A stretch of 64,000 bases of DNA, taken from Vitrella brassicaformis CCMP3155 (taxonomy: Eukaryota > Protista > Chromerida). The notes under the pieces were generated by a model that saw only the letters and a list, made by a program, of their open reading frames with translations, was not told where the DNA came from and did no database searches. The stretch covers positions 197,553 to 261,552 of the forward strand of contig CDMY01000802.1 in the NCBI GenBank assembly GCA_001179505.1. Reading direction: 5' to 3'. Made by a program: the position numbers and the translations under genes. Shown here one piece after another: positions 25,925-61,711 of this stretch. Numbering within the stretch: the first letter of the stretch is position 1; every line of letters starts with the position of its first letter.

Positions 25925-28900
25925 CACAGACAGAGAGGGAGGTCCTCACCTCACAGCGGTTCTGCCATCGTGTCTTGTGGTTGTGTGACTGTGTTGGCAG
26001 TTCATATGGATTCCCGCGATAGTGTCGATAGCCATGGGGTCTGCGTGGATCTTGCGCGAGGCGGAGGCCAACCCCCGGACACTCTACGCCAAACCCACAT
26101 CAGACGCCATGAGCGTAACCATCACACACGCACACGCGACTGGCGGGCACAGATGTGGTCTCACGTGTGCGATTTGTGTTGGGTTGTGTCTGTTGATTGA
26201 CGGACGTCTATTATCAGGACCTGGCCTTGATCCAGGAGAGGTATGGCGACTGGCCGCGTGTGACGTTCCTGCTGTTTGTGGGGGAGGATGGCAAGAACCT
26301 GCTGGACGAGGACGTCCTGTACAGGGCCAACCAAATGGTGGAGGGGCTCAACAATCGCAATGTCACTGTCAACGGCAAGGAATACCCCTTCGATGAAGTC
26401 TGCGTCAAGGGTACGTGATTGGATGGATGGGTGTGGGAGTGAGTGAGGCCATCCATCGTCATCCAACGCTCCAACAGACACCCACCCACCCACCCACCCA
26501 GCCACCCTGTGTGTCCATTGATTGATACAGACGGTACTGACGGGTGTACGATGGAGAACGTGCTGCGTATGTACAATGGCCGCTGGGCGAACAAGACCGC
26601 CGAGGAGCGCCCCCTCGACTGGCCCAACCATGATAAATACGTATTGCAGCAGGGCATCAACTGGCCCGTTGACGTCTTCCTCAAACCCCGTGGCACCGAC
26701 AACAACGGGACAACAATCGACAACGTATCAGGTATGCATTAGCCGGCCGACACACCGACACAATCCTATGACGTCACAGCGTCACCCTGTGTATGTGTGT
26801 GTGTGTGTGATCGCAGCGATGTTGTTTCGTTGGTCGCTGCGAGACGACACCTCCGACATGTCATCCGAGAAGCGCGCAGCGTCAATGGCGTGGGAGCAGG
26901 AGTTCCTCGACGAGGCCCACCATCATTGGAAGGACGAATTCAAGAAACACAATGTCTCCATCTACGCAAACGCACGACGATCCATCGGTCGGTCCGCACG
27001 GCAAGCTCTCAACCACACATGAAGAGGGAGGGAGGGACAGTGACGGACAGCCTCTCTCTCTCTTTCCCTCCCTCTCTGTGTCTGTGTGGCTTGGTGGTGC
27101 AGATGACGAGCTGAAGGCCAGCACGACACTCGGCTTTGCGGAGCTTATCCGCCTCTTCCTGGCCGGAGTGATTGTCTTCTGCTACGCCGCCGTGGCCAAC
27201 TTCTCATGCGACCAATCCAAGACCAAGTGAGACGAGGACACGCACACACACACACAATCCTTCCCTGCCGTATGTTTGGTGTTGTGTGTCTGGCTGTCTG
27301 CAGGACGTTTCCGGCCCTGATGGGCTGCCTTGCGGCTCTGTTGGGTTTTTTGCTGGGGTCCGGTCTGTGCTACGCGTGTGGGATGAAGCACGTGCCGCCG
27401 GCCGAGGCGACGCCATTCCTGGTGCTGGGTGTGGGGGTGGACGACATGTTCGTCATCATGAACAGCTACGCACTCGCATTCCAGTCATCCTCACCCAGAG
27501 AGAGGTGCCAACTCGCCATGAAGGACTGCGGTAAGTATGGCACTCAGACTCCCACACACACGGGGTGACGTGATGGCGGGTGTGAGAGCTGTGTGTGTGG
27601 TGTGTAGGTATCTCGATCACGATCACCACTCTGACCAACCTGATCGCTTTCGGTGTCGGCGCGGCCAGCCCCTACTACGCCATCGTCAACTTCTGCATCA
27701 TCACTGCCGTTGCGCTCGCCATGGTGGGTGCAAACACACACACTCACACACCAGTGCATCGCAGCACTGATTGGCTGGTCGTCGTGTTGCGTGTGTGTGT
27801 CACCAGGGTTACGTGCTGACGCTGACATTTTTCGTGGCCATCCTGTGTCTGGATTGCCGCCGCGAGGCCACCCAGCCGCCCCAGACCTTCTTCCTCGCCA
27901 CCTACTTCGACGGCTGCGGCCTCAGATGCTTCTCACGCAAGTCCACGCGCGACGACAGCACACGTGCAGACACGCACCGCACCAGCAGCACCGGCCACGG
28001 CAGCAGCTCCTCGAGCCGGCGCACCTCCCAGACATCCACAGAGGCCGGGGCGGGTGAGGTGGCGCTCACCTTCGTCAACGACGAGAAGGCCAGCTTCACC
28101 CAGCCAATGCATCCCGTCAGGCGATCGGCCAGCTGGCAGCCGGCCGGCGTCAAGCGGTACCCCACTCGCAAGGAGATGAGCACCTTCCAGCTCGTGGCAC
28201 ACCAGCTGCGGGACCAGGAGAAGAACATCCGCCGCCGTCGGCCGAGGGAGGGGGAGGTGCACGAGGAGACGTGCTGGGAGTGGTGGTTCCACACGCACCT
28301 GGAGGACCCCAGCAACCCCGCCCGGCGCGTGCCGAGGGGCAGCCGCGATGTGTCGGACGGCAAGGGCGGCCAGCGGCTGCCGTTCAAGCTGTGGTGGGAG
28401 GAAGACCCCAATGTGACCAAGTACTTTGAGTTTGAGGAGCCTAAGGGCAACGTCGGGCGGTGGTCGCGCAAGTTCTTCCGCAGTGTGTGGGGGCGGCTCA
28501 TCACCGTGCCCGCCTTCAAGGTCAGCCAGACAACCAGGGAGGGAGGGGGAGAGGGAGGGGAGCTCATGATGTGTGTGTGTGTGTGTGTGTGTTGTGCAGG
28601 TGCTGGTGGTGCTGATGTGGTTTGGATACCTTGCCATAAGTGGCTGGGGCGACTCCAACGTGACCATGGGCCTCAACCTCCTCGAACTCACGCCGTTCCA
28701 GTCCTACTACCGGGTGAGTACCTGACCGACAACGAGAGCGACGCACACGCCGCAACAGAATTGCCTCATGTAAATATGCATGAGTGCAGGAGTTCTACGA
28801 TGAGTTGTTGGATCGGTTCGACACGTACGGCGAGCAGGTCATGGTCATCTTCCCGGAACCGCATGAGTGGTGGAGAAACGAGGCCAGGGTCAGTCCACAC

Positions 28901-29586
28901 CACACCACACACAACCGTAAGTATCGATGTGTGTGTGTGTGTGTCTGTGTCAACAGGAGAACTACAAGCAGCTTGTGCAGCGTATCAATGAGAGTGACTA
29001 CGTCTCCAAGGGCCCCAACAACATGCTCGACCCACTCCGCATCTTCGAGGAACAGGGGGGACCGTTCGGAACAAAGAATCCAAACCTTGCCAACTACACC
29101 AACGACCCGACGCTCTTCATGACCGAGTAAGCTTACACAGACACTCTGGCGAGAGAGACGAGACGAGGGACATACCACACAAATTGCCCACGCGACCGTG
29201 CGTGTGTGCGTGTGTGCAGCCTGAAGAGATTCCTAGGAGGAACAGGTCGCTACCTCTCCACCGAGTTTAAGTTCTCAGGCGACAACCGTAAGCTTGCAAG
29301 CATCCCGCTTCACGTCACATGCATGCCTTATCCATCCGTTTATCTCTCAGAGACGATTGAGAGCTATCGCATGACGTTCTTCGCCAAGTCGGGGGTCAAC
29401 GGTCTGAAGCTCATGGAGGGGTCGCGCGACGACTGCCGCAAGGCGTCTGAGGCGAAGGCGGGGGCGATAAAGTGTCAGGCGTTTGGCGAGTACTTCATCT
29501 ACTACGAGAGCGACGCCACCATCCTGTTCGACACCTTCCAAAACATGGGATGGGCACTGCTGGCCGTACTCATTGTGAGAGCACCA

Positions 29587-29625
<39 letters not shown>

Positions 29626-32600
29626 TCTCATGTGTGTGGCTGGTTTGTGTGTGTGTGTTTGTGTGTGTAGGTGTCGATCTTCCTAATGCACCACTGGCAG
29701 TGTTGGGTGTTGGTCATCTTGATGATACTGAGTATCGACGTGGGCCTGTTCGCCTTCATGAAATTCTGGGGCCTCGACCTCAACATGCTCACCATGGTCA
29801 ACCTCATCATCTCAATCGGTATTACGAAACACCCACACACCCACAAACGCCTCAACGAACACACAGAGGGGGAGGGAGGCAGGAGCGTCATGTGTGTGTG
29901 TGTGTGTGCGATTGCAGGTTTCTCGGTCGACTACACCACCCACGTGTGTCACACATTCGCACACGCGACGGGGCCCACCAAGAATCACAGGTGAGGAGGC
30001 AGCCATCCATCCATCCATCCATTCATCCATCAATTGGCCGTGTGTGTGGTGTGTGTGGTTTGTTGATGTGTGCAGGGCGAACGAGACGCTGGTGTTGATG
30101 GGCAACGCCATTTTCCACGGCGCCATCTCGACCTTCCTCGCCATCGTCCTCATCGTCACAGTCGACTCGTTCATATTCGTCGTCTTCTTCAGAATGATGA
30201 CACTCGTACGCCATTGACACACACACACGCATACCAACACGCACGCACACAACACCCTCCTCCCTGTCTGTGTGTCTGTGTGCCTGCAGGTGCTGTGTTT
30301 CGGCTTCCTGCACGGCCTGATCATCTTGCCGGTCATCCTGACGTTCTTTGGCCCCCTGGACAACCTCGAGACCACTCTCAAGGGCGTGCCCACCTCGCTC
30401 AGCATTCAGGACGCTCTCGACAGAGAGGCCTCCCCGGTCGAGGCCGGCAACAGCAGCTACTACCACACCGACGGCAACCGTCTGTCGCCCATCGAGGAAA
30501 GCCCCATCGACAGCAACACCGTCAAGGAGTTTAAGCCACACGAATCTACCAACCGCGGCCCCGCCACCACAGTGCACCAGATGGCGCCCTTCACCAAGAG
30601 TGGCGTCTCCGACACGTCGTCCATCTTCAACTCGGGGGTGGCCAACGTCTTCGACACGGTCAACGCCTTCAACACGCGGCAGCTCGTGAGCTTCGCCCTC
30701 GCGCCCCCGCACACCAAGACCATGAGGGAGCCCTCACCAGGCACCCGATGCGGCAAACGCCTGACCGCCGCCACCGCCCAAGACACGGACAACCAGTCTG
30801 TGTGGATGTCGGCCAACTCGACAGCAGGCAACAACGGGGCGGGAGTGCAGGTGGTCTCGCGAGGCGCCACCAGCGCCCACGCGAAGCTGGACCGGGGCTT
30901 CCAGACCTTCCAGACGGCCGTGAGCGAGGTGGAGGAGGGCTCCACCCCGGTGCTGGGCAGCTTCTACGTGCTGGGTGGTGAGATCTACCACGACTGCTTC
31001 CCCGCCCTGCCCGACCAGCGCACCCCATTCTACGCCGGCAAGATCCCCCGCTTCCGCACCATGAAGACCGGCGAGAGGGACCTGGGGGCCGCCCACAACA
31101 AGGCCGGTGGCGGGCTGTTCCTCGACAGGCGTCTCGAGCTCATGAACGGGAGCAGAGCGGCACCCGCTGTGGAGCCCGAGGCGATCGTCACCCATGACAT
31201 GGCCACTGGCCCGGCCGCAATGGCCAGCCCCATGGGCGGCCTCTCACGACAGACGTCGAGCCTCAAGGCCATCAAGAAGCGCATCAGAGCCGTAAGAAGA
31301 CCAAAGGGGGGCGAAGGGAGAACAAATGAGTATTGTCGTGTGCGTCATTTGTTCAGAGCACGGAAGCGGTGGTCAAGGAGGAGATCTTCCTGCGGAGCGA
31401 GACGGGGCGGCTCACCCGGCAGTCGACCCAGCAGACGAGCCACCCCATGTCGCCCCTCTCACCCCTCGAGCGCGAGCACAGCATGGCGCGACGCAACTCG
31501 TTCGCACGGAAGCTGTCCCGGCAGCTGAGCAACTTCTCCCGCCGCCTGACGCGCAAGCAGTCGATACCCCCCACAAAGGAGGCCGAGCGCGAGGTGTCGC
31601 CCGTGAGCCAGGTGTCGATGCCCTCGCCCTACCCCCAGATGGTCACCTGGCCGGCCTGCTGGCCCGTCCGCGGCACCGACCTTCGACGGCCGGGGTGGGA
31701 GAGCGAGAAGGGATGCACCATTCCTGCAGTCAAAGTGCACAACATGGTACACACACGCAGACAGACAGAGAGACACACACACAGAGAGAGAGAGAGAGAG
31801 AGGGAGGGGCGAGGGAGGGAGGGAGAGAGGGAGAGCGCACCAGTGTCTGATGTATCTGTGTGGGTCCGTGCAGTCGTTGGAGGCGGTCCATAAGCTGGTG
31901 CAGATGGCGCAGTCGCCTGTGAGCGAGTGGAAGTTTCAATCCGAGAAGAATGGCGTCGTGGTTAGCACATATCCCAGAGCACCCCTGCCCCCCACCACAC
32001 ACACACTCATCCATCCATCCATTTGTGTGCAATTGCTCATGTTTGTCTGTTTGTATGTGTGTCAGCTGGAGCTCAAGACGTTGCCGGATAGCAAGGACCC
32101 CGTGATCCGCGGCCGGTACACGATGCGGTCGCCCGGGCTGGACATCCACGAGGTCAAGGAGGTCATCCTCGACAGAAATAGCGTCTGGCGGGCCCAGTAT
32201 GAGTTCTGGCTTTACGAGGCCAGCCAGCACGTCGCACAAGTCGCCGACGAGACCTTCCTCACATACCAGGTCAGAAAGAAGACAAGACACACAGACAGAC
32301 AGGAGCGTGTGTTGGATGGATGGATGTGTGTGTGTGTGTGGTGTGACCTGTATGTGTAGATCTACAAGAGTTCGATCCCGAGCGACTCCCGGCGTGTGCT
32401 CTGCCACATCACTCACGCCGAGATGGTCCGCCCGCACACACACTCAGCCATCCATGAGACGAGACACCCATTCACCATTTGCTGTATGTGTGTGTGTGAT
32501 TGTGCAGCTGTCACCGCATCAGTGTGTGGTTGCTGCCGTGGACCTCAAGCAGCACATCCCCGACGACCTCCTCGTCACCAAGAAAGAGAAGGCCGTCAGA

Positions 32601-33020
32601 GCCGAAATCCTGGTCAGTCACACAACACACACACAACACAGATAACAGAGACACATGCCTCCATCCATCCATCCACCATTGTGTGTGTGTGATTTGCAGC
32701 AAGGGGGCCATGTGATCAGCCAGAGCTGCGACGGGACGATCGACGTGGTGTTTGTGATGCAGCTCGACGTCAAGCCGTTTGCATGGGCACCCAGGGCGGC
32801 CGTTAGGGCGGCCTGCGCCAATGTCTACTTCGAGCAGGTGAGAGGGTGCCTGCCCAATGGGAGGGACCGATAGATAGATGCGTCAATGAACACTGTGTGT
32901 GTCTTGTCTTGTGGTGCCTTTCAGGCTCAGCAGCTGTATCGCATTGACAACGTCTTGGGCGACGCGCGGGAGATCATGTCCCAGCCGCCCTCGCCCAGGA
33001 ACTCCGACAGCGACGCCTAG
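25751..33020 (+). CDS. Patched/NPC1-like sterol-sensing-domain membrane protein with long cytosolic tail and C-terminal START domain
   Basis: SSD motifs FLVLGVGVDDMFVI and ISITITTLTNLIAFGVG. Second half GFSVDYTTH, GNAIFHGAISTFL, FGFLHGLIILPVIL. Phase-0 splices link the tail to EWKFQSEKNG, IRGRYTM, WRAQYEFW, AVRAEILQGGHVI, VVFVMQLDVK. Stop TAG at 33018-33020. Confidence 0.9.
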
Positions 33021-35396: not shown

Positions 35397-37015
35397 CTAC
35401 CTCAGCACGCGCAGCACTTCTATCTCATCAGCAGTGAACTCCAGCGACCCACCCAACACCGCATCGCCATCCTCATCTCTCACTCCCATGTAGCCCTCAG
35501 GCAGATACTCGCTGTCGATGTACTGATAGCAGCTGCGGATATCGGAACCATCAAACTCACCATCTATAGCAGTGCCATCTCCATCAGCATCAAACCCACT
35601 CCAGCCCAACTTCAGATGAGGTGGTTGGCCAACCATTAGCTTCGCTGTTCCCTGTCCCGTTCCCGATATCGCAAAGTATACATTGCTGTTCCTCTCCGCC
35701 AAGCTCACAGACTGCCTCTCTTCGTCGATGTCGATCTTGGTCGGCTTGTCGAAGTGGCCGGCCAGTGAGAAATACTACAGATCACGGTCCACGCCGTCAC
35801 TTCTGTAGACGCCGAAGACGTACTTGTCCTTTCTGATAACAAACACGAGACCCCCCCACCCCACTGAGTCCAGGTCGTCATAGTTGGTGCCCTGCACAGA
35901 GTCCCACAGGTCGCCCCATTCAGTGCCGTGAACAGACGTCCTACACACACACACACACACACACACAAGACACACACACAGACACAGAGCCATCTGTCAG
36001 CTGTTGGCGTCACGGCATGAGATGTGTCTGTCTACCGGAAGAGTGTGGTGAGTTCTGTGGTGTCATTGCCCAGCAGGCCGAGCAGCCCCTCGTACTCCGA
36101 CGCAGACAGCGATGTGCCCTTCGGCGCGGACACCCGCTGCACGTGTAGCACCTCCATCTCATCCGCATGGAAGAAGTCCGACCCGCCCAGATAAGCAGGA
36201 TCGCCATTGCTATCCCCCTCCCCCTCCCCCGTGTAGCCCTCAGGCAGATAGTGGCCCAAGGTGTACTGATGGCAGCTGCGGATGTCGGCTGCCGGCCGGT
36301 CACTGCCCTCGTCCTTACCCAAATACAGCCGCCCACCGATGACCACATTCGCACCCCACACACTCCCCTCCCTCCCCGCCACACGCACATTCTGCTCCGC
36401 TCGGATGATGTCGACCTTGGTCGGCTTGCCGAAGTGACCCGCCAATGAGAAATGCCACAGATCACAGTCGTACCAGTGCCAGTCGGTCGGGTCGTCGGGT
36501 AAGAAGGCCGCAACAAGTACCAGTATCCAGACCGCAATTGATGTACGCGCCGAAGACGTACGGACATCAAACACATACAAATACTTGTCCTTCCTAATAA
36601 CAAACACGAGAGGCATTGCATCGCCCACATTGTCCAGCATATCGCCGTAGGTGGTGCCATGCACAGACGTCCTACACACAGACACACACACACACACAGA
36701 ATCTGCCCATCAGCTGTCACATGACCCATCCCAGCACTGTTGGCATGATGCGTGTCTACCGGTAGAGTGTGGTGAGGTCTGTGGTGTCATTGACCAGCAG
36801 GCCGAGCAGCGCATCAGACTCCGACGCAGACAGCGATGTGCCCTTCGGCGGTGAGGCCTCCTGCACGCGACGCAAGTGGATCTAAACACACGAGTCATCC
36901 TCTCACACATCAAATGAAATGAATGGATTGATCGTGTTACCTGTTGGGCGGGCCTTGCCTCAACAGACGTTGCCACGCAGAGGATCAGCAGGACAGTCAC
37001 TGCCCGAATCGCCAT
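35397..37015 (-). CDS. Secreted tandem TLDc-domain protein; second domain has a deletion and a nonsense codon
   Basis: Signal peptide MAIRAVTVLLILCVATSVEA; LYR|TSVHG...LVFVIRKDKY...WHFSLAGHF...AADIRSCHQY...LGGSDFFHADEMEVL. Second domain reads DL*YFSLAGHF with TAG at 35775-35777. Confidence 0.85.
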
Positions 37016-37231
37016 GAAGTGAACTGGACGATAGCAGTCAACAAGTCTTCTTATTGATTTCTAAGGTAGCAGATGAACAAAGGCAGCGTCTGAAGTCAAC
37101 AAGAAGACAGGAAGACAAGGCAGACAGACAGGGGGAGAGACCAGGCGAGGAGGGAGGGCTCTCTCTCTGTCGGGGTCTGATCGAGGCTGCCGCTTCCAGA
37201 TTTCGAGTGGGTAAACCTTGGAGTGGTTGTG

Positions 37232-37400
37232 ATACGCTCGGCGGGCTCCGCTCCCACGGGGTCGCGCCGACTGCACGTCGTCGCCCAGCCGTCGTCATCC
37301 ATCCCAGCCGACACTCTAACTGCCGTCTTCGCCGATCTCATACCGCGTAAAGGTGGCAGGGCCCAATCCGGTCCCATGCCCGTGCACGTGTCGTGCCCTC
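37232..37400 (-). repeat. Split direct repeat B2 (169 bp)
   Basis: Identical to 37558-37726. Confidence 0.95.
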
Positions 37401-37415
37401 GGGGGACCGGCGGGT

Positions 37416-37558
37416 TGGGTGGGTGGGTGCGAAAAATCACGGAGAGCGCTTGTCCTGCCAAGCGCACCTGCGAGCCGGAGACGGTGTGTGTCGATCGGTC
37501 GCTCCCGCCCGCGGCGCGTATGTACGCGATCGCTGCGCTACGCACGCGTACGCTACCA
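37416..37558 (-). repeat. Split direct repeat A2 (143 bp)
   Basis: Identical to 44878-45020. Confidence 0.95.
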
Positions 37559-37726
37559 TACGCTCGGCGGGCTCCGCTCCCACGGGGTCGCGCCGACTGC
37601 ACGTCGTCGCCCAGCCGTCGTCATCCATCCCAGCCGACACTCTAACTGCCGTCTTCGCCGATCTCATACCGCGTAAAGGTGGCAGGGCCCAATCCGGTCC
37701 CATGCCCGTGCACGTGTCGTGCCCTC
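37558..37726 (-). repeat. Split direct repeat B1 (169 bp)
   Basis: Identical to 37232-37400; abuts A2 with one shared base. Confidence 0.95.
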
Positions 37727-37852
37727 CCAAAGGGCCAACGGTAGCGCGGTATGAGAGAGGAGTGGCAGTTAGTGTGTGGGAGGAAGCGTAGTATTCGTTT
37801 CACGCAATTCTGGTTGTCCCGTCGAGTTGTTAGCCCCTACCTGTTGCTTGCA

Positions 37853-38728
37853 ATGTCGGCGCCCTTTTGCCCGACTCCTCGGCCGCCATCGCTCGGCACG
37901 CTGCCGCGTCCGTGTCGTTTGGCCCATCTCGCCCGTCGTGTCGTGGACTTCGGGCCGTGCAAGCGGTTCTGTCAGACGTCCGCCCTAGTGACCGGTGAAG
38001 GACACCGGCTTATGTTGAATACTCTCGATCTGCTACACGAGGTATGCCTGTGCGTGTCGTGTTGTCGGTCCGTCAAGTGTGTCTCGTGGTTGTCTCAGAG
38101 CGGGTACTCGATGAGTGATATCGTCTATATCTTGGCGCAAGCCGCCTGCCAGCTTGACGAGTGTTTCAGACTCTTCCGTCCCGGCGGTCAGCGAGAGCGT
38201 ATGCTGGCTTGTCTTGTGCATACCTTTCTTGCACATTGCTTGCTTGAAGACGAGACTCTCTCGCTTTCGACCTGGTATACCCGTCTGGTAAGTATGGCCC
38301 CGTCTGGCGCGTATGGCTGTAATCGCTGGGCTACACAGCTTGAATCGCTGCTTCACTGTACTGTGTATTTCAGGCAACTTCCTACTGCTCATTGTCTACT
38401 TTCGAGAAGTCTTCCTTCCGCCTGTTAACGCTTCAGAGCTGTCGTCTGTATGTGGCCGATGAGATCGTATTGGCACGGGCCGCGTACTTTCGATGTAATT
38501 CCTCCTGGCACGACCCGTCCCTCATTGTTGTTCTTTCGTATTTCCCTTATGCAGTCGACAGGCGGGCAAGGCCGCCGGAGGCTGACGGGGATGATGACCT
38601 TATGAGCACGGGTCTAACGGTAAGATTCCACCCTTCGTGCGGAGACACGTTAGTTAGACAAGCCTGTCATTCAGGTGTCTGTGATTGGTCCCTTCGGTCG
38701 AAGCCTGCCGCTCTTCAGCGATGCGTAA
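37853..38728 (+). CDS. Intact five-exon gene inside the element; resembles an alveolate cyclin-fold-like hypothetical family
   Basis: GT-AG introns at 38042-38098, 38288-38373, 38495-38554 and 38620-38674 give a continuous ORF: MSAPF...LNTLDLLHE|SGYSMSDIVYILAQA...HTFLAHCLLEDETLSLSTWYTRL|ATSYCSLSTFEKSSFRLLTLQSCRLYV...LPLFSDA*. The family call is from recalled similarity. Confidence 0.7.
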
Positions 38729-40314
38729 AGGGGCTGCTATTTTGGTGTCGCGCTTGGCGGCAAAAAGAGCGTCCGTGGGTAGAGGGAGGTGACCTGCATA
38801 GATTGACGGTAACCGGGTGCAACAGCGACTGATACGAAGTGTGCGTGTAATGTGAGAGTATCCCTTAAGTGCATGTTCGCTCATTGTCATCTCGGCCTAT
38901 CCCGCATACGGCGCAATGTACTGTAATGTACTGTTACGTCGTACCGGACCGGTCTCAATCCGGAGGGCAATGGTTATCCGGCGCAATCGACCTCCGAGAC
39001 AGATCTGTCCGTATAATTGGTGTTCAACGCACAGTATCATCGTATGTCGCGCGAGTAGGTGATTGAGTCAGGTACGCCTAATCAGCAAAGCCTTCGAGGC
39101 AAATGCGCCTGGTGACGTGACGCGTGAGTGACGTCCGTTGCTCTCTCTGTTCGATGTGTCTCATAGTATGCGTTCCGTGTCTCATTGTATTTGGCGTTTA
39201 GCCATAGGTGTCCCTTCTGGAAACCCATGTCACCTGCTGTGTTTGTCCCTTGGGTGACTTGCTGGGTGACGTCGCTTGGTGACTGAGACCTGTCATTTCG
39301 CTGACTGCCCTCAGTCGCATCGAAAGATAGCACGTGGGTATCCGCCAGCCGGTGAGCAAGTCCCTAAGTCTCGCCTACAGGTAAGCGATTCCTTCCCGCA
39401 GTCGTGCGGCACCGTCGAGTGGGTTAGTCTTACGCCATATACGCGCGTCATCGGTGAGCGCGTGGCGAGACATGCATCGTTGGCACGCAAGTCGTTGCGG
39501 CAAGTGTACCTTACCGATTACCCGGTGTGTGGATCGTCAAGTACATCGCGGGTAAAATTTGTCGCTTATTGCCATCTCGGCCCATCCCCGCACACGTCGT
39601 AATGTATGATAACGTCGTGTCGGATTGGCTACACTCCGAAGGGCAGTGGGTATCTCGTAAGCGTAACCTACACGAGGGAGATGTTTTAAGGGCAAGGGTC
39701 GCTCGTCGGCAAGGCCGTTCCCCTGCGCGAGATAAGCTTGTTGTCTGTCGGCGCCAATCACAATGGCGTGTCTTCTAGGTGGAGACTCAACGGTCGCGTG
39801 ACTTGGACTGCCAGTCATCGCGAGGGGACGCAGGCAGGTTGTTAAGCTTCGTGCAGTGGCGGTGTACGTAGACTGGAATGTGAGGGCAATCGGGTATGCC
39901 GGCGTCTAAGTCCCTCATTGGGAGTTTGCACTTGCCGACACGCGTGATTCGTCGACTAGCAGCTCTCGAGGGCAACAGTGCGTCACCGTGAGTGTCTGAG
40001 TGCTCGAGACAAATGAGACGGGCATGTCCTCCGTCGTCGAGGGTATGTCTTATCGCTGAGTGAGTTGTCAGGTCATGTACCACCGCAGGTGTACCGTGGT
40101 AAGGTGTTAAGAGACCCGTACTTTCTTATTGAGTGCTTCTCTGGTGTAAACCCTTTGAGTCCCCTTCACCTTCCCTTCGGTCGGGTGAGATTCCCGAAAT
40201 GGCCCAATGGTGTGTGGGAGCGCGAGAGGGATGTGCCCCTCGGCGAGTGAGAGCTCACAACTCCAGCGAGCAACGCGTGCCTCCCTCTGGATAGATATGG
40301 ACTCGCCTATGAGT

Positions 40315-41530
40315 GACCCTTGAGACAGACCCAAGGATGCGTTGTGCACGTTGTGCAGCCCGACGAGCTCCCTGTCATGCTTTGAGCCGCGACTGCCCGA
40401 TCGAGCGGTCACTCTCGTGTCGTGATGGCCCCACTCCCGCAATGCTACCTTTTCGTCACGTTTCGTCAAGTCTGAGCCTCGTCGACTAGTCAGTCTTGCG
40501 ATGACACCATACGTGTCGGATAGTGAATGTCACTATAACTTGAGCCGTGATGGCCGCTTCATCCGGTCCATGTCGTGATGCGTCAGGCCGACGGCCTCGT
40601 GGGTTGAATAGTGCACCCCGGCAATGTCTCCTGCGATAGCCCTATCGCCCGTCATCCTCGCAATGTCTCGGGCCGTAATGGCCTGCCTCATCGAATAGTC
40701 AACCCCGGCATTGTCTCAATATGCGATAACTCTATCGCCCGTCATCCCCGTAATGCTTCGGGCCGTGATGGCCCCACCGACCAGACTCCACGATGTCTCG
40801 GGCCGCAATGGCGCCGACTGGTGGGTTTCTCCGGCGCTTGCCGCCTATGGATGTTGTACGGCGTTTGACGCCGATTGATGATTATGTTCGGCGGTGCAGA
40901 CTGCGCCCCGTCGAACCGTCAATCCCCAAACGTCCCGGGCCGCCATGCCCTGGTCGAACACTCAATCCGCTATGCCTCGGGCCGCCATGGCCGAACGAAT
41001 CGTCAATCCCGCAATGCCCCGGGCCGCCATGACCTGACCGAACCGTCAATCCCGCAATGTCCCGGACCGCCCTGGGTGATTACGTACGGCGACACCGACT
41101 TCGCCCGTCGAACCGTCAATTCTACAATCATGCCCCGAGCCGTCATGGCCGGATCGAAGAATGAATCCCGCAATGTCCCGAGCCGCCATGCCCTGATGGA
41201 ACAATCAATCCGCCATGCCCCGGGCCGCCGCTGTGTGTGACCCTTAAGACAGACCCAAGGATGCGTTGCGCACGTCGTGGAGCCCAACGCGCTCCCTGCC
41301 CTGTTTTGGGTTGCGACGACTCGCTCGAGCGGTCGCTCTCATGCCGTGATGGCCCGACTCCCGCACTGCTATGGCCGCGTCAAGTCTGAGCCTCGTCGAC
41401 TAGAGTCTGAGCCTCGTCGACTAGTCAGTCTCGCGATGATACCACACTTTGTCGGATAGCGAGTGTCGCCATGACTTGAGTTGTGATGGCCGCTTTACAC
41501 GGTCCATCTCGTGATGTTTCAAGCCGACGG
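40315..41530 (+). repeat. Internal tandem duplication, offset about 925 bp
   Basis: tgaccctt(g/a)agacagacccaaggatgcgttg...gtcaagtctgagcctcgtcgactag occurs near 40315 and near 41240. Confidence 0.85.
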
Positions 41531-41539
41531 CCCCGTCGA

Positions 41540-42430
41540 ATAGGAAACCCCGGCAACGTCTCCCTATGCGATAGCCCTATCGCCCGTCCTCCTCGCAATG
41601 TCTCGGGCCGTCATGGCCTGCCTCATCGAATACTCCACCCAGGAAATGTCTCAATATGCGATAGCCCTATCGCCCGTCATCCTCACACTGTTTCGAGCCG
41701 TGACGGCCTGCCTCATCGAATAGTCCACCCCGGCAATGTCTCAGTATGCGATAGCCCTCTTGCCCGTCATCCTCGCAATGTCTCGGGCCGTGACGGCCTG
41801 CCTCATCGAATAGTCAACCCCGGCACTGTCTCAGTATGCGATAGCCCTATCGCCCGTCATTCTTGCAATGTCTCGGGCCGTCATGGCCTGCCTGATTGAG
41901 TGGTCCACCCCGGCAATGTCTCAGCATGCGATAGCCTTATCGCCCGTCATCCTTGCAATGTCTCGGGCCGTGATGGTCTGCCTAGTCGAATAGTCCACCC
42001 CGGCAATGTCTCAGTGTGCCATAGCCCTATTACCCGTCGTTCTCGCAATGTTTATTGATGGGCTGCGTCATCGAATAGTCAAAACCGGCACTGTCTCAGT
42101 ATGCGATAGCCCTATCGCCCGTCATTCTTGCAATGTCTCGGGCCGTGATGGCTTGCCTCATCGAATAGTCAACCCCGGCACTGTCTCAGTATGCGATAGC
42201 CCTATCGCCCGTCATTCTCGCAATGCCTCGGGCCGTCATGGCCTGCCTGATTAAGTGGTCAGCCCCGGCAATGTCTCAGCATGCGATAGCCTTATCGCCC
42301 GTCATCCTCGCAATGCCTCGGGCCGTGATGGCCTCACCGACTAGATTTCGCGATGTCTCGTGCCTCCATGGCCTGCCTCACCGAATAGTCAGCCCCGGCA
42401 ACGTCTCAGTATGCGATAGCCCTATCCCCC
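41540..42430 (+). repeat. 90-bp tandem repeat, about 10 units
   Basis: tgacggcctgcctcatcgaatag recurs at 41701 and 41791; unit cgaatagtccaccccggcaatgtctcagtatgcgatagccctatcgcccgtcatcctcgcaatgtctcgggccg... Confidence 0.9.
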
Positions 42431-43770
42431 GTCATCCTTGGATCGAGCAGTCAGTCCTGCAACGCCCCTGGCCGCCATGGCCTCCCCGAACAGTCAATCC
42501 CGCAATGCCCCTGGCCACGAAGGCCTCATCGAGCAGTCAGTCCTGCAACGCCCCTGGCCGCCATGGCCTCATCGAGCAGTCAGTCTGGCAATGCCCCTGG
42601 CCGCGAAGGCCTCATCAAGCAGTCAGTCTTGCAATGTCCCTGGCCGCCATGGCCTCCCCGAACAGTCAATCCCGCAATGCCCCTGGCCACGAAGGCCTCA
42701 TCGAGCAGTCAGTCCTGCAATGCCCCTGGCCGCCATGGCCTTCCCGAATAGTCAGTCCCGCAATGCCCCTGGCCGCGAAGGCCTCATCAAGCAGTCAGTC
42801 TTGCAAAGCCCCTGGCCGCCATGGCCTCCACGGACAGTCAGTCTCGCAACGCCCCTGGCCACGACGGCCTCATCGAGCAGTCAGTCCCGCAATTTTTGTG
42901 GCCGCCCTGGCCTCCCCGAACAGTCAGTCCCGCAATGCTCCTGGCCACGAAGGCCTCATCGAGCAGTCAGTCCGGCAATGCCCCTGGCCACGAAAGCCTC
43001 ACCGAGCAGTCAGTCCCGCAATGCCCCTGGCCGCGAAGGCCTCATCAAGCAGTCAGTCTTGCAATGCCCCTGGCCGCCATGGCCTCCTCGGACATTCAGT
43101 CCCGCAATGCCCCTAGCCGCGAAGGCCTCATTAAGCAGTCAGTCCGGCAATGCTCCTGGCCGCCATGGCCTCCCCGAATAGTCAGTCCCGCAATGCGCCT
43201 GGCCGCGAAGGCCTCATCGAGCAGTCAGTCCGGCAATGCCCCTGGCCGCCATGGCCTCCCCGGACATTCAGTCCCGCAATGCCCCTAGCCGCGAAGGCCT
43301 CATCGAGCAGTCAGTCCGGCAATGCCCCTGGCCGCCATGGCCTCCCCGAATAGTCAGTCCCGCAATGCTCCTGGCCGTGAAGGCCTCATCAAGCAGTCAG
43401 TCTTGCAATGCCCCTGGCCGCCATGGCCTCCCCGGACAGTCAGTCCCGCAATGCCCCTGGCCGCGAGGGCCTTACCCAGCAGTCAGTCCCGCAATGCCCC
43501 TAGCCGCGATGGCCTCATCGAGCAGTCAGTCCCGCAAAACCCCTAGCCGCGACGGCCTCCCCCAACAGTCAGTCCCGCAATGTCCCTGACCGCGATGGCC
43601 CTCATCGAGCAGTCAGTCTCGCAATGCCCCCGGCCGCGGTAGCCTCCCCCGGCCGCGGTAGCCTCCCCCAACAGTCAGTCTCGCCATGTCCCTGACCGCA
43701 ATGGCCTCCCCCAACAGTCAGTCCCGCAATGTCCCTGGCCGCGATGGCCTCCTCGAGCAAGTCAGTCTCG
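42430..43770 (+). repeat. 43-bp minisatellite with alternating variants (86-bp higher-order unit), about 30 units
   Basis: Unit starts at 43308, 43351 and 43394: cagtcagtcccgcaatgcccctggccgc followed by gaaggcctcatcgag or catggcctccccgaa. Confidence 0.9.
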
Positions 43771-43974
43771 CCACGCGCCGAGCCGCGATGGCTGGTGACC
43801 CCTGTGCGTGTCAGTGCGGTGACTAAGTTGGTGACCTGTGCGCCCGTCGGCGCGATGAATGTGTTGTTGTTTGCGGTTCGATTGTGGGTGCTTGTTGGGT
43901 TCATTGTTATGACAATGTCTGCCTCATGATGGTTGTGGAAGGCGCCGAGACATCGGCGGGGATCCCAAGTCGTT

Positions 43975-44460
43975 GAAGTCGGCGGATCCAGCAGCAGGGG
44001 CGTTGCAGTCGATGGATCCAGCAGCAGGGGCGTCGAAGTCGGGATTCAGCAGCAGGGGCGTCGAAGGCGGCGGATCCAGCAGCCGGGGCGTTGAGGTCGA
44101 TGGATCCAGCAGCCGGGGCGTCGAAGTCGGCGGGTCCAGCAGCAGGGGCGTTGAAGTCGACGGGTCCAGCAGGGGCGTTGAAGTCGGCGGATCCAGCAGC
44201 AGGGGCGTTGAGGTCGATGGATCCAGCAGCAGGGGCGTCGAAGTCGGCGGATCCAGCAGGAGGGGCGTTGAGGTCGATGGATCCAGCAGCAGGGGCGTCG
44301 AAGTCGGCGGATCCAGCAGGAGGGGCGTTGAAGTCGACGGGTCCAGCAGCAGGGGCGTTGAGGGCGACGGATCCAGCAGCCGGGGCGTTGAACTCGATGA
44401 ATCCAGCCATGGCGGCGTCGGACACGGCGGTTCCAGCCGCAGGGGCGTTGAAGTTGACCG
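43975..44460 (-). repeat. 30-bp tandem repeat (reads NAPAAGSIDF or PLLLDPSTST on the minus strand)
   Basis: ggatccagcagcaggggcgttgaagtcg(g/a) repeated about 15 times. Confidence 0.9.
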
Positions 44461-44877
44461 ACTCGCAGGGGGGGCGTCAGAGACGGCGGGTTCAGCAGCA
44501 GGGGCTGCGGTGAACAGTCCAGCCGCAGGGGGGGTTGAAATCGTTGGATACAGCAGCGATGGCGTCGATGCTGGCGGATCCGGCGGCAAGGACGTCGGGG
44601 ACGGAGGGTGCAGCGCCAGGGCCACCCAGGGGTGTCGGAGACGTCGGATCCAGCAGCAGTCTCTCGGCGGCTTTCTGAACCCCGCGACGAGGGAGCTCCG
44701 CGTAGCGGGAAGGGCAAGCGGGCGCCCTGAGGCTGGTTGGCGGTTGGCTTCTCCCTGGTGTGGCTCCTTTACGCCACCTCCCGTCGGTCTCGCCTCGCTT
44801 CGCTGAGACGCCCCCGGCGTCATGGGGCGCCTCCCCGGCCTCGGCGGACGAGTGCGGGTGTAAGTGGGTGCGAAGCA

Positions 44878-45020
44878 TGGGTGGGTGGGTGCGAAAAATC
44901 ACGGAGAGCGCTTGTCCTGCCAAGCGCACCTGCGAGCCGGAGACGGTGTGTGTCGATCGGTCGCTCCCGCCCGCGGCGCGTATGTACGCGATCGCTGCGC
45001 TACGCACGCGTACGCTACCA
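44878..45020 (-). repeat. Split direct repeat A1 (143 bp), 5' end of the element
   Basis: Identical to 37416-37558. Confidence 0.95.
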
Positions 45021-45192
45021 AAGGGGCTGGCTCCCCGATGAGGCTGCGCAGTGGCGTATACTGACCAGCGCTTCACAAGTCTCCAATAGTGGGGAGCCAA
45101 TCCGTCCCGTATTTGGAGTGGTTTCAGGCAGCACCCTATCCAAGGCCCCATCTCCACACTGACTCTAAAAGAACCAGATCTGACGATGGATA

Positions 45193-45239
45193 GAGAGCCA
45201 AACAGACAGGCAAGGCGATGAATGAATGAGTGATTACAG
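45193..45239 (+). repeat. 47-nt dispersed motif (46 of 47 identical to 63841-63887)
   Basis: gagagccaaacagacaggcaaggcgatgaatgaatga(g/a)tgattacag at both sites. Confidence 0.9.
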
Positions 45240-45677
45240 ACACGCACGTCTCCCTGTATCGTGTGTGCCTCCGTCAGGGGCAAGGCTCACGCTGGCGCCT
45301 TTCATCCGTGTGCGCGTATATAGAGACCAATCATTTGCATGGCTGGATGGTTCGGAACAGATTCTATCACGGTCTCACGAGTGGATGAGTGTACGACAAC
45401 ACAAGACACTGAATCAATCCATCCATCCATTGACTGACACCACACATCCACTGAATCAGCACAGGCAGGCAGGCAGGCAGGCAGGCATGCAGCAGGCCAC
45501 ACATCACAGACACTTGTCAGGTAGACCCGATTGACCTACCTACGCTGACACAGTACCGTACTAGAAATGCAATAGGCACACAATGGCCTCACAATCGAGA
45601 CAGAGAGGAAGACGAACGTGGATAAAAGTGCCGACGACAGACAGACAGACAGACAGACAGACAGAGATGCGCCCCAC

Positions 45678-45830
45678 TCAGTCACTGCTGCACACCACCT
45701 GCAGCACCTCGTTCTCGTCAGCCATAAACTCATATGACCCACTCAGTTCTGTCTCCCCCGTGCAGCCCTCAGGCACATCGTTGCTGTCGGTGGCTTGAAG
45801 GCAGCTACAGATGTCGGCATCACGCCCAGT
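45678..45830 (-). pseudogene. Orphan TLDc C-terminal fragment
   Basis: ADICSCLQATDSNDVPEGCTGETELSGSYEFMADENEVLQVV matches the TLDc C-terminus. Confidence 0.65.
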
Positions 45831-45856
45831 ACACGCCAGGTCGTGAATTGACTCAA

Positions 45857-46816
45857 TTAAAATGCGGCAAAAACTACCGCGGTCAGCCCCACGAGCACCG
45901 CAATGGCAATCTGCGTGCGGCTGGCGCTTGCACGCAGCACCTCAATCTCGTCACCCATGAACTCCAGCGACCCGCCAAACAGAGCATCGCCATCCTCATC
46001 CCTCTCTCCAATGTAGCCCTCGGGCAGATCGTCGCTGACGATGGCCTCGTGGTAGCAGCTGCGGATGTCGGCAGCAGGCTGGTGACTGCCGCCGCTGCCA
46101 CCCCAGCCCAAATGCAGCGCCGCACCGATATTCACATTCTCACAGCACACATCTGCCCCCCTCACCGCCACAGTCACAAACGTCTCATTTGAGTCGAGGT
46201 CCATCTTGGTCGGTGTGGGGAAGTGGCCCGCCAACGAGAACCGCCACACATCACACATGTAGTTGAGGGTGCCTGTCTTGTTTACATCGGTGAACTTTCG
46301 GGTGTGGTCGTCGGGCTGCAGCAGACCGCCACCGATATAATAGCCGAACACATACTCGTCCTTTTTGATCACCAACACCAGAGGCAGTGCGTTGCCCACT
46401 CGGTCCAGCAGGTTGCCATATTCAGTGCCGTGCACAGATGTCCTACACACATGCACACACACACACACACACAGACGGTGAAGGATCTTCCAGCCATTGT
46501 TGACATGGCATGATGTGTGTGTACCGGTAGAGGGAGATGAGTTCTGTGGTGTCATTGACCAGCAGGCCAAGCAGCGCATCATACTCCGACGCTGACAGCG
46601 ATGTGCCGTTCGGCAGGTCACTCTGCACACGACGCAGATGCACCTGAAACACACGAGTCAGTCAGTCAGTCACGCCACACCAAAACATTTATGTCTGTGA
46701 ATGAATGAATGAATGAATGGGTGACTGACTCGTGGATGTGCTCATACCTGTTGTGCCTCAGCAGACGTCCATGCCACAGAGAGAATCAACAGGTAAACCA
46801 CTGCCCGAATCGCCAT
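45857..46816 (-). CDS. Secreted TLDc-domain protein with hydrophobic C-terminus; paralog of the 35397-37015 gene
   Basis: MAIRAVVYLLILSVAWTSAEAQQ|VHLRRVQ...LYR|TSVHG...WRFSLAGHF...AADIRSC...FMGDEIEVL...IAIAVLVGLTAVVFAAF*. Upstream and downstream flanks are also homologous to the paralog. Confidence 0.87.
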
Positions 46817-47146
46817 GACCTGGAGCCAACAGAGTGTTCTTATTGAGTTCTGTCGATCAGCAAAGGCAGCCAGATGAACAAAGGTGAGCTCCAGAAGAAG
46901 ACACAGAGGAGAGGGAGACAGGGAAGGGGAGAGGAGGGGAGCTCTCTATCGGGGCCTGTTGATCGGAGCTGCCGCTTCCGAGATTTCTGTGTGCAACCTC
47001 ATCGGGGAGCCAGCCCCCTTCATTTGCCGCCTCTCATCTGTCGTCTCCTTTTCTCCCGGCACACGATCTGCAAGCTCAGCTGCTTCTGGGAGAGGGGACC
47101 CGATAAGCGTGAGTCTGTTCTGTGAGCTTGACATAAGGCAAGGCTG

Positions 47147-48541
47147 ATGATCCATCGCCCTTTGCTTCTCCACGTTAATGGTCTGTGGCTGTTGCTGCTG
47201 GTGCTGCTGTCATCGAGATCTGCATGTGCCCAGCAGCAGCAGCCCGATGACATCGACGGCTTTGTCAGTCAGCAGGCAGCATCGCTTGACCAGCTGGACC
47301 CCGGCTGCTGGGTGAGCCAACCACATGGAGCACACGCACAGACAGAGTAGCCGAGTTATGACGTTGCCTCTGTGTGCCTGCAGACGTGGAAGTCGACGTT
47401 GATGGGTGGGGTCGGGTGGGTGGGCCAGCATACCAACCGGGAACGGATACATTTGTGTGCCATCTGCATGTGTGCAGGCACTTATCTGGAGGGTTCCGAC
47501 CCCATATCGAAGCGATACGTGTGGCTGACTGACGGGTGCGCCAAGGCTTGCCAAGAGAACCAAGATTGCAAGGCATGGAGCTTCGACTGGTAAATCAGTA
47601 TGTCGCCATCCATCGACCCACCCCACTTTTCCCAACATTCATGTGTGTATGGTGGATGGATGGGTGTGGTGCAGGAAGGGTGAGTGTTTCCTTCTGTCCA
47701 ACGTGACTGCGGTGCGTCGGGCGGGCGACAGCGACGGGCGGGGCTTCGCGGCCATTGCTATGGGCAAGAAGGGCAGCTCAGACTGCCGCTCTCTCGACGA
47801 AAGACACCCATGCATCCAACACAACGTCAAAATACTCTGGTCAGCCGGCTGGGAGAGGGAGGGAGAGAGAGAAGATGCAGATGTGTGTGTGTCGCAGGTC
47901 TGACATCAGCTACAAGTACGCCGACGCCAATCTGACGGTGGATGAGTGTCAGCAGGCGTGCATCGACATGATCGAGTGCCGCTTCTTCACACACATCGCT
48001 CTGCCAGGCCAAACCAGACAGTGGTACACACGCACCCCACACACGCCATCCCACGCCAACCACCCACCCACGCACTCTCTCTCTCTCTCTCTCTCTCTCC
48101 ATCTCTCTCTGTCAGCTTTATGAAGAATGCGGGGGTTGACGACAACAAGGTATGCTCGGAGCACGCCACGAGCGGCTTCGTGTACGCCCGGGACTGCGGA
48201 GCGCCGAGTGAGCCTCTGGAGCCGGCGGACGGCGACGTGCAGAGGCTGACCAGCCAGGGGCTCTCACTCTCACTGGAGCTGCTGCAGTCGTCATACCCGC
48301 CGTATCCAGTGGCCGAAGGTGCGTGTGGGGATGTGGCCGAGCCACACAGATCTGCATCTTCTCGTGTGGGTGTGGGTGTGGGTGGGGTCCGACAGAGGCT
48401 TACGAGAAGGTCAATGTGTGTGGGTGCTACAAGGAGGCCACTAAGCCTTACTTTGAGCGGCTGGACGGCGGCTCAGACATGGGCATCGACCCAGACAAGC
48501 CGCCCGAATACGCGCCGGGGAGCGCCGAAGTGATACAGGTC

Positions 48542-48579
<38 letters not shown>

Positions 48580-54115: not shown

Positions 54116-54149
<34 letters not shown>

Positions 54150-57655: not shown

Positions 57656-58094
57656 CTATCCGCTCAGCGCTTCCACCACGCCAACGAGCACTCCGGCTGT
57701 GCGAGGATACATCTCACCCACAGTCTTCCCTGCCCACACCATCCGCTCCGTCGTCCTGACCTCGGGAGGGTCCTGTGTGCCTGACAGCCCCAGCCCGACA
57801 TAGACTGCAAACTCATCGGTCGCCTTGCACCCACACAGGATCACCATCTTCACACGCCGGCCGCCCCCTCCGCTCTCACACGCGTCCACCAGGCGACGGC
57901 CTCCCCAGGTGACGCCCCCCGCCTGGCCGATGCTGTCCTTCAGCCGCTGCTGGTCGGCCACCGGGATCAGGTCACTGACGTCGTGAGGAATCAGGGAGGC
58001 GTCAGACGCCGCTGAGACCAAATCGCTGCGCGATAGAAAGACCAGGTCCGTGAAGGATGCAGCTACCAGGTTGCAACCTAGGTTGCAACGCACA

Positions 58095-58127
<33 letters not shown>

Positions 58128-59241: not shown

Positions 59242-59346
59242 GGAAGGATAACTTCAGGCCCAAGCACAAGATCAGAAACACTTTAAGCCCCCCTTCGCGC
59301 CTCAGGCAGACACAACAGCCGATGGATCTTTGGATCCAACAGCGCC

Positions 59347-61546: not shown

Positions 61547-61711
61547 GTCTACAGCCACTGTCTGCCTGCGGGCTACTTGGGAGTGAGGGATCAATATGGC
61601 TACGCTGTGTTAGGTGGGTCAGAGTACTTGACGGCTGACGAGCTAGAGGTGCTGCACCTGGTGCACGCGCAGTACGTGGCCTGTCAGGATCGATACGGTT
61701 TTATCACATAA
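61547..61711 (+). pseudogene. Orphan TLDc C-terminal fragment
   Basis: VYSHCLPAGYLGVRDQYGYAVLGGSEYLTADELEVLHLV. Confidence 0.75.

What the first reader, a model, noticed from the sequence alone, without database searches (positions are those of the whole stretch)
37853..38728. Intact intron-containing cargo gene carried antisense inside the retroelement
Seen: four short GT-AG introns (57, 86, 60 and 55 nt) splice to an uninterrupted ORF on the plus strand, opposite to the inferred element transcript. These introns lack the CA/GACA microsatellites typical of host introns here. Known: introns antisense to a retroelement RNA are not spliced from it, so they survive reverse transcription. Inference: the element can move a complete, spliceable gene by an RNA route. 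The protein (LLHESGYSMSDIVYILAQA...FLAHCLLEDETLSLSTW...YCSLSTFEK...RLL) resembles an alveolate cyclin-fold-like family I recall from dinoflagellates and apicomplexans. A mobile cyclin-like cargo could affect host cell-cycle control or element transmission.
Basis: partly seen in the sequence, partly recalled or inferred. Interest (0 to 1): 0.82.

Follow-up and report, generated by a model that had tools for sequence, protein, structure and literature searches.

The report
Cyclin-like gene inside repeat-bounded insertion
A real, intact, four-intron gene for a small cyclin-fold protein of the alga Vitrella sits inside a 7.8-kb stretch of compositionally foreign DNA whose perfect end repeats are arranged like those of tyrosine-recombinase retrotransposons, but the stretch has no reverse transcriptase and only this one copy could be seen, so movement of the gene as RNA is suggested, not shown.

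Summary
Exons 37853-38041, 38099-38287, 38374-38494, 38555-38619 and 38675-38728 (+), with GT-AG introns of 57, 86, 60 and 55 nt, reproduce the public 205-aa protein of Vitrella brassicaformis CCMP3155.

The protein belongs to a family of at least 207 relatives with no Pfam model. Named members are Vitrella, Chromera and Platyproteum. Its confident model matches cyclin-box proteins, Speedy/Spy1 first, but only weakly.

Introns 1 and 2 lie at the same position and phase as in a paralogue in ordinary host DNA, so the gene is of cellular type.

The gene lies in block 37232-45020. Perfect split direct repeats bound the block (A1...B1-A2-B2 on the minus strand), the Ngaro/VIPER layout, so the gene is antisense. 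The block has none of the window's 57 microsatellites, and its dinucleotide make-up is unlike the host's, with switches at the repeat ends.

No RT, RNase H, recombinase or Gag was found. More than half of the block is minisatellite, no second copy was seen, and the published census lists no DIRS in Vitrella.

Verdict: a young foreign insertion with retroelement-like ends and a cyclin-fold cargo gene; the RNA route is inferred from architecture alone.

The parts
37232..45020 (-). Whole repeat-bounded block (7,789 nt): A1-[internal]-B1-A2-B2 read on the minus strand; compositionally distinct from the host
   Evidence: Repeats. No microsatellites (0 of 57 in the window, 6.9 expected). Dinucleotide switch at both ends. 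No target-site duplication.
44878..45020 (-). Repeat A1 (143 nt), 100% identical to A2; outer end of the block
   Evidence: (D14)
37558..37726 (-). Repeat B1 (169 nt), 100% identical to B2; abuts A2 with a 1-nt overlap at 37558
   Evidence: (D13); sequence
37416..37558 (-). Repeat A2 (143 nt)
37232..37400 (-). Repeat B2 (169 nt); other outer end of the block; 15 nt (37401-37415) separate it from A2
37853..38728 (+). Cyclin-box-fold gene (205 aa, = public protein P0001), five exons, antisense to the polarity of the repeats
37853..38041 (+). Exon 1 (63 codons)
38042..38098 (+). Intron 1, 57 nt, GT..AG, phase 0; a multiple of 3 without a stop; same position and phase as an intron of paralogue P0002, and 1 nt from one of P0004
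38099..38287 (+). Exon 2 (63 codons)
38288..38373 (+). Intron 2, 86 nt, GT..AG, phase 0; same position and phase as introns of P0002 and P0004
38374..38494 (+). Exon 3 (121 nt); end of the conserved domain
38495..38554 (+). Intron 3, 60 nt, GT..AG, phase 1; a multiple of 3 without a stop; supported by the public annotation only
38555..38619 (+). Exon 4 (65 nt), in the non-conserved tail
38620..38674 (+). Intron 4, 55 nt, GT..AG, phase 0; supported by the public annotation only
38675..38728 (+). Exon 5 with stop codon
37624..37788 (.). Long imperfect hairpin: one arm inside B1, the other just inside the block, upstream of the gene's ATG
   Evidence: z -4.3; 0 of 200 shuffles fold as well
38729..40300 (.). 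Unique non-coding-looking internal DNA; short ORFs on both strands without family matches
40606..43792 (.). Minisatellite arrays with 43-, 86- and 90-nt units
43971..44505 (.). 30-nt tandem array (18 copies)
43924..44823 (-). Annotated 299-aa single-exon ORF just inside A1; 10-residue repeats; five frames are open here; no relatives and no meaningful family match; probably not a Gag
35775..37015 (-). Left neighbour: host TLD-domain paralogue; its start codon lies 217 nt from the block
45857..46816 (-). Right neighbour: host TLD-domain paralogue

Best explanation
The gene is real and intact. It encodes a divergent member of a family of small single cyclin-box proteins found in chromerids and their relatives; the fold is closest to Speedy/RINGO, so a CDK-binding partner is the likely role (inferred). 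The gene did not arise where it now lies. It came in with a 7.8-kb block of DNA that was inserted recently between two host TLD genes. The block's ends are perfect split direct repeats in the order A1-[internal]-B1-A2-B2, and joining the outer ends would recreate the internal B1|A2 junction. That is the terminal architecture of tyrosine-recombinase retroelements (Ngaro, VIPER, PAT-like DIRS). The block has no reverse transcriptase or recombinase of its own and is mostly minisatellite. It is therefore best read as a non-autonomous or gutted relative of such elements, which could only have been moved by enzymes supplied from elsewhere. By the polarity of the repeats the gene is antisense. On that strand its introns would not be removed from an element transcript, which fits their survival. 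Shown: the gene model, the fold, the shared introns, the repeats, the foreign composition and the absence of element enzymes. Inferred: that the block is a retroelement derivative, that it travelled as RNA, and that the protein binds a CDK.
For: Gene model equals the public protein. Family: 207 relatives at E<=1e-3, with the nearest in Vitrella and Chromera. P0001 keeps all 3 invariant and 7 near-invariant family residues. Model: pLDDT 82.5, pTM 0.74. Nearly all top PDB matches are Spy1/Speedy or cyclins, and the top BFVD matches are giant-virus cyclin-like proteins. Introns 1 and 2 are shared with P0002, which lies in ordinary host context. Repeats: 169 and 143 nt, 312/312 identical, and the ends coincide with the internal junction. 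The layout matches the published definition of split direct repeats (PMC4157794; PMC13465315; PMC8547959). No target-site duplication. Composition: 0 of 57 microsatellites fall inside the block (P about 6e-4). In the unique part of the block CpG o/e is 1.12, TpG/CpA 1.07 and TpA 0.91, against a host mean of 0.80, 1.44 and 0.46. None of 272 host windows matches the gene. Paralogue genes are host-like, and the switch falls at the repeat ends. A young insertion (identical repeats) contrasts with an old gene (at most 39% identity to any relative), so the gene arrived with the block.
Against: No RT, RNase H, recombinase or Gag domain in any ORF of the block or in the public annotation within 10 kb. 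Only one copy was seen. There is no paralogue above 40% identity and no protein from the repeat region. The repeats occur nowhere else in the window or in other fetched loci. Metagenome and viral scans were empty. The published census gives 0 bp of DIRS in Vitrella. In PAT-type elements the internal repeats can lie elsewhere, so the polarity, and hence 'antisense', is not certain. Perfect 143-169-nt repeats in a short-read assembly could be partly an assembly product. All fold matches have E > 0.03, and no cyclin or Spy1 sequence model matches.
Confidence: 0.5

Rival explanations
1. One reading: the block is a working retroelement, mobilised in trans, that spreads this complete, spliceable gene through an RNA copy. 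The gene's introns are protected by the antisense orientation.
For: Everything that supports the best explanation. In addition, a gene at most 39% identical to its nearest relative sits in an insertion whose repeats are still identical. This suggests it has been carried in an element lineage for a long time.
Against: There is no second copy and no autonomous partner. There is no transcript evidence for either strand. More than half of the block is minisatellite, which looks like decay rather than a working element.
Confidence: 0.25
2. The block is foreign DNA that entered by a DNA route, for example a circular episome, a fragment from a large DNA virus of protists, or DNA from another chromerid-like organism. 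The X-Y-X...Y repeat order would be a by-product of integration of a circle or concatemer followed by deletion. No reverse transcription would be involved.
For: Non-host composition with sharp borders. No RT. The arrangement can formally be written as a head-to-tail dimer of X-internal-Y with one internal part lost. A family member, P0011, lies on a dense, AT-rich, intron-less contig that looks viral. Giant viruses carry cyclin-fold proteins.
Against: The gene has spliceosomal introns at the positions of host paralogues, unlike the intron-less viral-looking copy. The block's GC content (55-62%) is like the host's, not like that contig's 34%. The dimer-plus-deletion route needs a deletion that leaves the two repeats almost abutting. 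The split-direct-repeat layout is a described hallmark of one element class.
Confidence: 0.2
3. There is no mobile element. An ordinary, fast-evolving host gene lies in a minisatellite-rich intergenic region, and the perfect repeats are an assembly artefact or a recent local duplication.
For: A single copy, in a short-read assembly, with repeats 100% identical and of read-to-insert-size length. The gene is annotated as a normal gene.
Against: The gene and all unique DNA of the block differ from 272 host windows and from the paralogue genes in dinucleotide make-up, and lack microsatellites. An assembly error does not create that. The repeat ends coincide exactly with an internal junction. The intergenic distance of 8.8 kb is large for this gene-dense genome of 72.7 Mb and about 23,000 genes.
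Confidence: 0.1

Closest known systems
Ngaro retrotransposons (DIRS order), e.g. the four types in Cafeteria burkhardae (PMC8547959)
   Same: Split direct repeats A1-[internal]-B1A2B2; length of 6-8 kb; stands out from surrounding DNA by composition; no target-site duplication seen here.
   Different: Ngaros encode a Gag-like ORF1, RT/RNase H and a tyrosine recombinase, and occur in many copies together with isolated A-B repeats. This block has none of the enzymes, one visible copy, large minisatellite arrays and an antisense cellular-type gene with introns.
VIPER, with the related SIRE and TATE repeats of kinetoplastids (PMC6681497; that SIRE is a short non-coding relative of VIPER is from my own knowledge)
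   Same: A1...B1A2B2 repeats, and the existence of non-coding relatives that depend on enzymes made elsewhere.
   Different: No sequence relation was tested or seen. Those elements carry no host-type cargo gene.
Non-autonomous LTR derivatives (LARD/TRIM); 93 kb of 'putative TRIM/LARD' is listed for Vitrella
   Same: Terminal repeats around an internal region without element enzymes.
   Different: Those have two simple LTRs; here the repeats are split (two pairs, three copies at one end).
Speedy/RINGO (Spy1-CDK2, PDB 5uq1; Speedy A, 7e34)
   Same: Best structural matches (prob 1.0, TM 0.47-0.55 on the target, 98-119 columns); a single cyclin-box domain of similar size.
   Different: Foldseek E-values of 0.14-0.4; 17-20% identity; no match to any Pfam cyclin or Spy1 model at E<=10; no PDB match by sequence or profile.
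Cyclin-like proteins of giant viruses (mimivirus L268b, Bodo saltans virus, Megaviridae samples; BFVD)
   Same: Same fold at similar weak scores. One sequence relative (P0011) lies on a virus-like contig.
   Different: The Vitrella gene has four spliceosomal introns and its nearest relatives are cellular chromerid genes.

Membership tests
Ngaro/VIPER-type tyrosine-recombinase retroelements (DIRS order) | Split direct repeats A1-[internal]-B1-A2-B2, with A1=A2 and B1=B2 | tested here: met
   143-nt and 169-nt pairs, both 100% identical, in that order on the minus strand; definition from PMC4157794, PMC13465315 and PMC8547959
Ngaro/VIPER-type tyrosine-recombinase retroelements (DIRS order) | Joined outer ends reproduce the internal B1|A2 junction | tested here: met
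   The repeats stop exactly at 37232 and 45020, and the same ends abut at 37558; the neighbouring bases differ
Ngaro/VIPER-type tyrosine-recombinase retroelements (DIRS order) | Reverse transcriptase / RNase H gene | tested here: not met
   No such domain in the 14 ORFs scanned within or overlapping the block, from 58 aa upward (the ORFs lying inside the tandem arrays were not scanned), nor in the public annotation; only about 1.5 kb of unique non-gene DNA is left
Ngaro/VIPER-type tyrosine-recombinase retroelements (DIRS order) | Tyrosine recombinase gene | tested here: not met
   Same scans
Ngaro/VIPER-type tyrosine-recombinase retroelements (DIRS order) | Gag-like first ORF after A1 | tested here: inconclusive
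   A 299-aa ORF starts 55 nt after A1, but it is a 10-residue tandem repeat with no relatives
Ngaro/VIPER-type tyrosine-recombinase retroelements (DIRS order) | Several copies, isolated A-B repeats, or insertion polymorphism in the genome | not testable with these tools
   The Vitrella assembly cannot be searched as DNA here. Indirect evidence: no further copy in the window or fetched loci, no near-identical protein, and 0 bp of DIRS in the published census
Cyclins (Pfam Cyclin_N and relatives) and Speedy/RINGO (Pfam Spy1) | Match to a family sequence model | tested here: not met
   No cyclin or Spy1 family at E<=10 for P0001 or its exons. None at E<=0.001 for 59 relatives. No PDB match by sequence or profile. 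UniRef nevertheless names it 'Cyclin N-terminal domain-containing protein'
Cyclins (Pfam Cyclin_N and relatives) and Speedy/RINGO (Pfam Spy1) | Cyclin-box fold (helical bundle) | tested here: met
   Confident all-helical model. Nearly all of the top 50 PDB matches are Spy1 or cyclins, and the top viral matches are cyclin-like, but all E-values exceed 0.03
Cyclins (Pfam Cyclin_N and relatives) and Speedy/RINGO (Pfam Spy1) | Binds and activates a cyclin-dependent kinase | not testable with these tools

The most novel reading that the evidence does not exclude
A non-autonomous Ngaro-like retroelement of a chromerid alga carries a functional four-intron cyclin-box (Speedy-like) gene in antisense orientation, and has moved it, introns included, through an RNA copy. 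This would be a natural case of a retroelement transporting a complete spliceable cellular gene, and the first tyrosine-recombinase-type element reported in Vitrella.
Probability: 0.25. Interest if true: 0.8.

Novelty: new variant of a known kind. Interest (0 to 1): 0.55.

Why it matters
Genes picked up by retroelements normally end up without introns and in the sense orientation. An intact multi-intron gene kept antisense inside an element with retroelement ends would show a natural way for whole, regulated genes to travel by RNA. It would also add a tyrosine-recombinase-type element to a lineage for which the published census lists none. Independently of mobility, two results stand. First, a family of at least 207 small cyclin-box proteins without any Pfam model exists in the closest free-living relatives of apicomplexan parasites, where cell-cycle control is unusual. 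Second, one member sits in DNA whose composition marks it as a recent arrival.

Tried and rejected
Searches that gave nothing:
- Pfam on each exon by reference, and on exon 1 to exon 2 read through the in-frame intron.
- PDB sequence search with P0001, and profile search with alignment A1.
- Pfam on 59 relatives and on 10 long relatives, looking for fused retroelement domains; nothing relevant.
- Word search with the 299-aa ORF and with an ORF spanning the repeats, to find other copies.
- Rfam over 36500-46000.
- Metagenome contigs: no match with the B1|A2 junction pattern or with P0001.
- Exact-product look-ups for transcript contigs of P0001, of its unspliced 225-aa ORF and of the 299-aa ORF found only the genome or nothing. 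The control P0004 was also absent and only P0002 was present, so this test has little power.
- Naming further relatives: no taxon names.

Ideas considered and rejected:
- A simple LTR element. The repeats are split, and there is no target-site duplication.
- A processed retrocopy of a host gene. The gene has introns.
- A recent duplicate of P0002 or P0004. Identity is only 35-39%, and the composition differs.

Full report
**Origin of the window.** The window is Vitrella brassicaformis CCMP3155, contig CDMY01000802.1 of GCA_001179505.1. Locus L001, fetched around the public protein, is identical to window 27853-48728.

**The observation.**
- Reading the sequence shows an ATG at 37853 and four GT..AG introns: 38042-38098 (57 nt), 38288-38373 (86), 38495-38554 (60) and 38620-38674 (55). 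The stop is at 38726-38728.
- A word search by reference with exon 1 to exon 2, read through the in-frame intron 1, returned one protein, P0001. It has 205 aa and UniRef names it 'Cyclin N-terminal domain-containing protein'.
- A script walked the gene against P0001 and found that exactly these four introns (phases 0, 0, 1, 0) reproduce it.
- I searched the exons by reference and used the tool-returned public protein for whole-protein work. I neither built nor searched a joined-exon sequence of my own, and the script kept and printed none.
- The public model came from Augustus with RNA-seq intron hints (PMC4501334).
- Introns 1 and 2 are also supported by homology, since alignments to relatives cross both joins without a gap.
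- Introns 3 and 4 lie in a non-conserved tail with pLDDT below 55 and rest on the annotation alone. Introns 1 and 3 are multiples of three without stops.

**The protein.**
- Pfam finds no cyclin family even at E<=10, and PDB sequence and profile searches are empty.
- The exhaustive search found 207 relatives at E<=1e-3. They match residues 50-165 or so.
- The nearest are two adjacent Vitrella genes (P0002, P0004), two Chromera genes and unnamed transcripts. Platyproteum vivax is the only other named source.
- None of 59 members has a Pfam family, and ten long members show no fused retroelement domain.
- With that alignment AlphaFold gives a confident helical model: pLDDT 82.5, pTM 0.74, above 90 for roughly residues 30-165.
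- In PDB, Foldseek's best matches are Spy1/Speedy A, followed almost only by cyclins H, E, B, C, K, A and Pho80. In BFVD they are cyclin-like proteins of giant viruses.
- All these matches are weak, with E-values of 0.04 to 2.
- So the fold is a single cyclin box. Membership of the cyclin or Speedy sequence families is not met.

**Shared introns.**
- P0002 and P0004 lie head to head among ordinary host genes (VPS9, a DEAH helicase) on another contig.
- P0002 is also found on an intron-less 1,191-nt contig from run SRR646408, evidently a transcript. This confirms its introns.
- In the family alignment, P0001 introns 1 and 2 fall in the same columns and phases as two P0002 introns. Intron 2 also matches one in P0004, and another P0004 intron is 1 nt from intron 1.
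- The gene is therefore of cellular type, with ancestral introns, and is not a processed copy.
- It is nevertheless only 39% (P0002) and 35% (P0004, Chromera P0003) identical in the domain. The Vitrella-Chromera pair P0004/P0003 is 60% identical.

**The surroundings.**
- Two pairs of perfect repeats bound a 7,789-nt block. X is at 37232-37400 and 37558-37726. Y is at 37416-37558 and 44878-45020.
- Read on the minus strand this is A1-[internal]-B1-A2-B2. That is the split-direct-repeat layout given in the literature for Ngaro, VIPER and PAT-like DIRS elements (PMC4157794; PMC13465315; PMC8547959).
- The outer ends of the block are exactly the ends that abut at the internal junction 37558, so joined ends would recreate that junction.
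- There is no target-site duplication.
In PAT-type elements, however, the internal repeats can lie elsewhere, so the polarity is not certain.

**Composition.**
- None of the window's 57 CA/GA/GACA-type microsatellites falls in the block, where 6.9 would be expected (P about 6e-4).
- Host DNA has CpG o/e 0.80, TpG/CpA 1.44 and TpA 0.46. The unique part of the block has 1.12, 1.07 and 0.91, and the gene has 1.14, 1.02 and 0.90.
- None of 272 host windows reaches the gene's values. The paralogue genes are host-like.
- The switch falls at about 37,000-37,300 and 45,000-45,300, at the repeat ends.
- The block is therefore a recent arrival. Because the gene shares the block's signature and is old relative to the identical repeats, it came with the block.

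**What is missing.**
- No ORF of the block, and no annotated gene within 10 kb, has an RT, RNase H, recombinase or Gag domain, whole or broken.
- More than half of the block, about 4.3 of its 7.8 kb, is minisatellite with 30-, 43-, 86- and 90-nt units.
- The annotated 299-aa ORF next to A1 lies in a tandem array where five frames are open, and it has no relatives.
- No second copy of the gene, the repeats or the block was found in the window, in other loci, among proteins, or in viral or metagenome contigs.
- The published census lists 0 bp of DIRS in Vitrella.
- No transcript evidence could be obtained, but the control shows that this test is weak.

**Verdict.**
The block looks like a non-autonomous or gutted derivative of a split-direct-repeat retroelement that carried a cyclin-box gene into this site.
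- Movement by RNA is inferred from repeat architecture only.
- Rivals are entry by a DNA route and an assembly artefact.

Noticed in passing
L004:3576-4100 (ENA ERZ893782 contig k147_1441506): P0011, a 174-aa relative of the gene (33% identity), lies on a 34% GC contig of back-to-back intron-less short genes (CCCH finger, Bles03, GH10, GIY-YIG). It looks like a large DNA virus of a protist or a very compact genome, so the family may also travel in viruses.
   Followed up: partly
window 37624-37788: A long imperfect hairpin: one arm lies inside repeat B1 and the other just upstream of the gene. The fold has z-score -4.3, and 0 of 200 shuffles fold as well. The other copy of the repeat has no local partner. 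Its function is unknown.
   Followed up: partly
window 37751-38832: Introns 1 (57 nt) and 3 (60 nt) are multiples of three without stops, so their retention would keep the reading frame. An in-frame ATG at 37751 would add 34 residues.
   Followed up: no
window 43924-44823: The annotated 299-aa gene lies in a 30-nt tandem array where five reading frames are open. It has no relatives and only a sub-threshold extensin-like match, so it is probably not a real protein.
   Followed up: partly
window 40606-43792: Related minisatellites with units of 43, 86 and 90 nt fill about 3.2 kb of the block and occur nowhere else in the window.
   Followed up: no
window 1-37231 and 45021-64000; L002: Host DNA has a strong and uniform dinucleotide signature (CpG o/e about 0.8, TpG/CpA about 1.44, TpA about 0.46) and a CA/GA/GACA microsatellite about every 1 kb, often in introns.
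   Followed up: partly
window 35397-37015, 45857-46816, about 60840-61170: TLD-domain paralogues flank the block on the minus strand, and a further related piece lies inverted near 61 kb.
   Followed up: no
window 9468-9934 / 13025-13496; 51836-52071; 45193-45239 / 63841-63887: Other repeats: a 300-nt pair at 93% identity, 3.56 kb apart; a 118-nt tandem pair at 99%; and a 47-nt pair at 98%, one copy 173 nt outside the block.
   Followed up: no
window 27853-33020: A large Patched / sterol-sensing family gene (1,542 aa in the public annotation) lies upstream of the TLD genes. ORFs 27771-28991 and 30272-31528 are parts of it.
   Followed up: no
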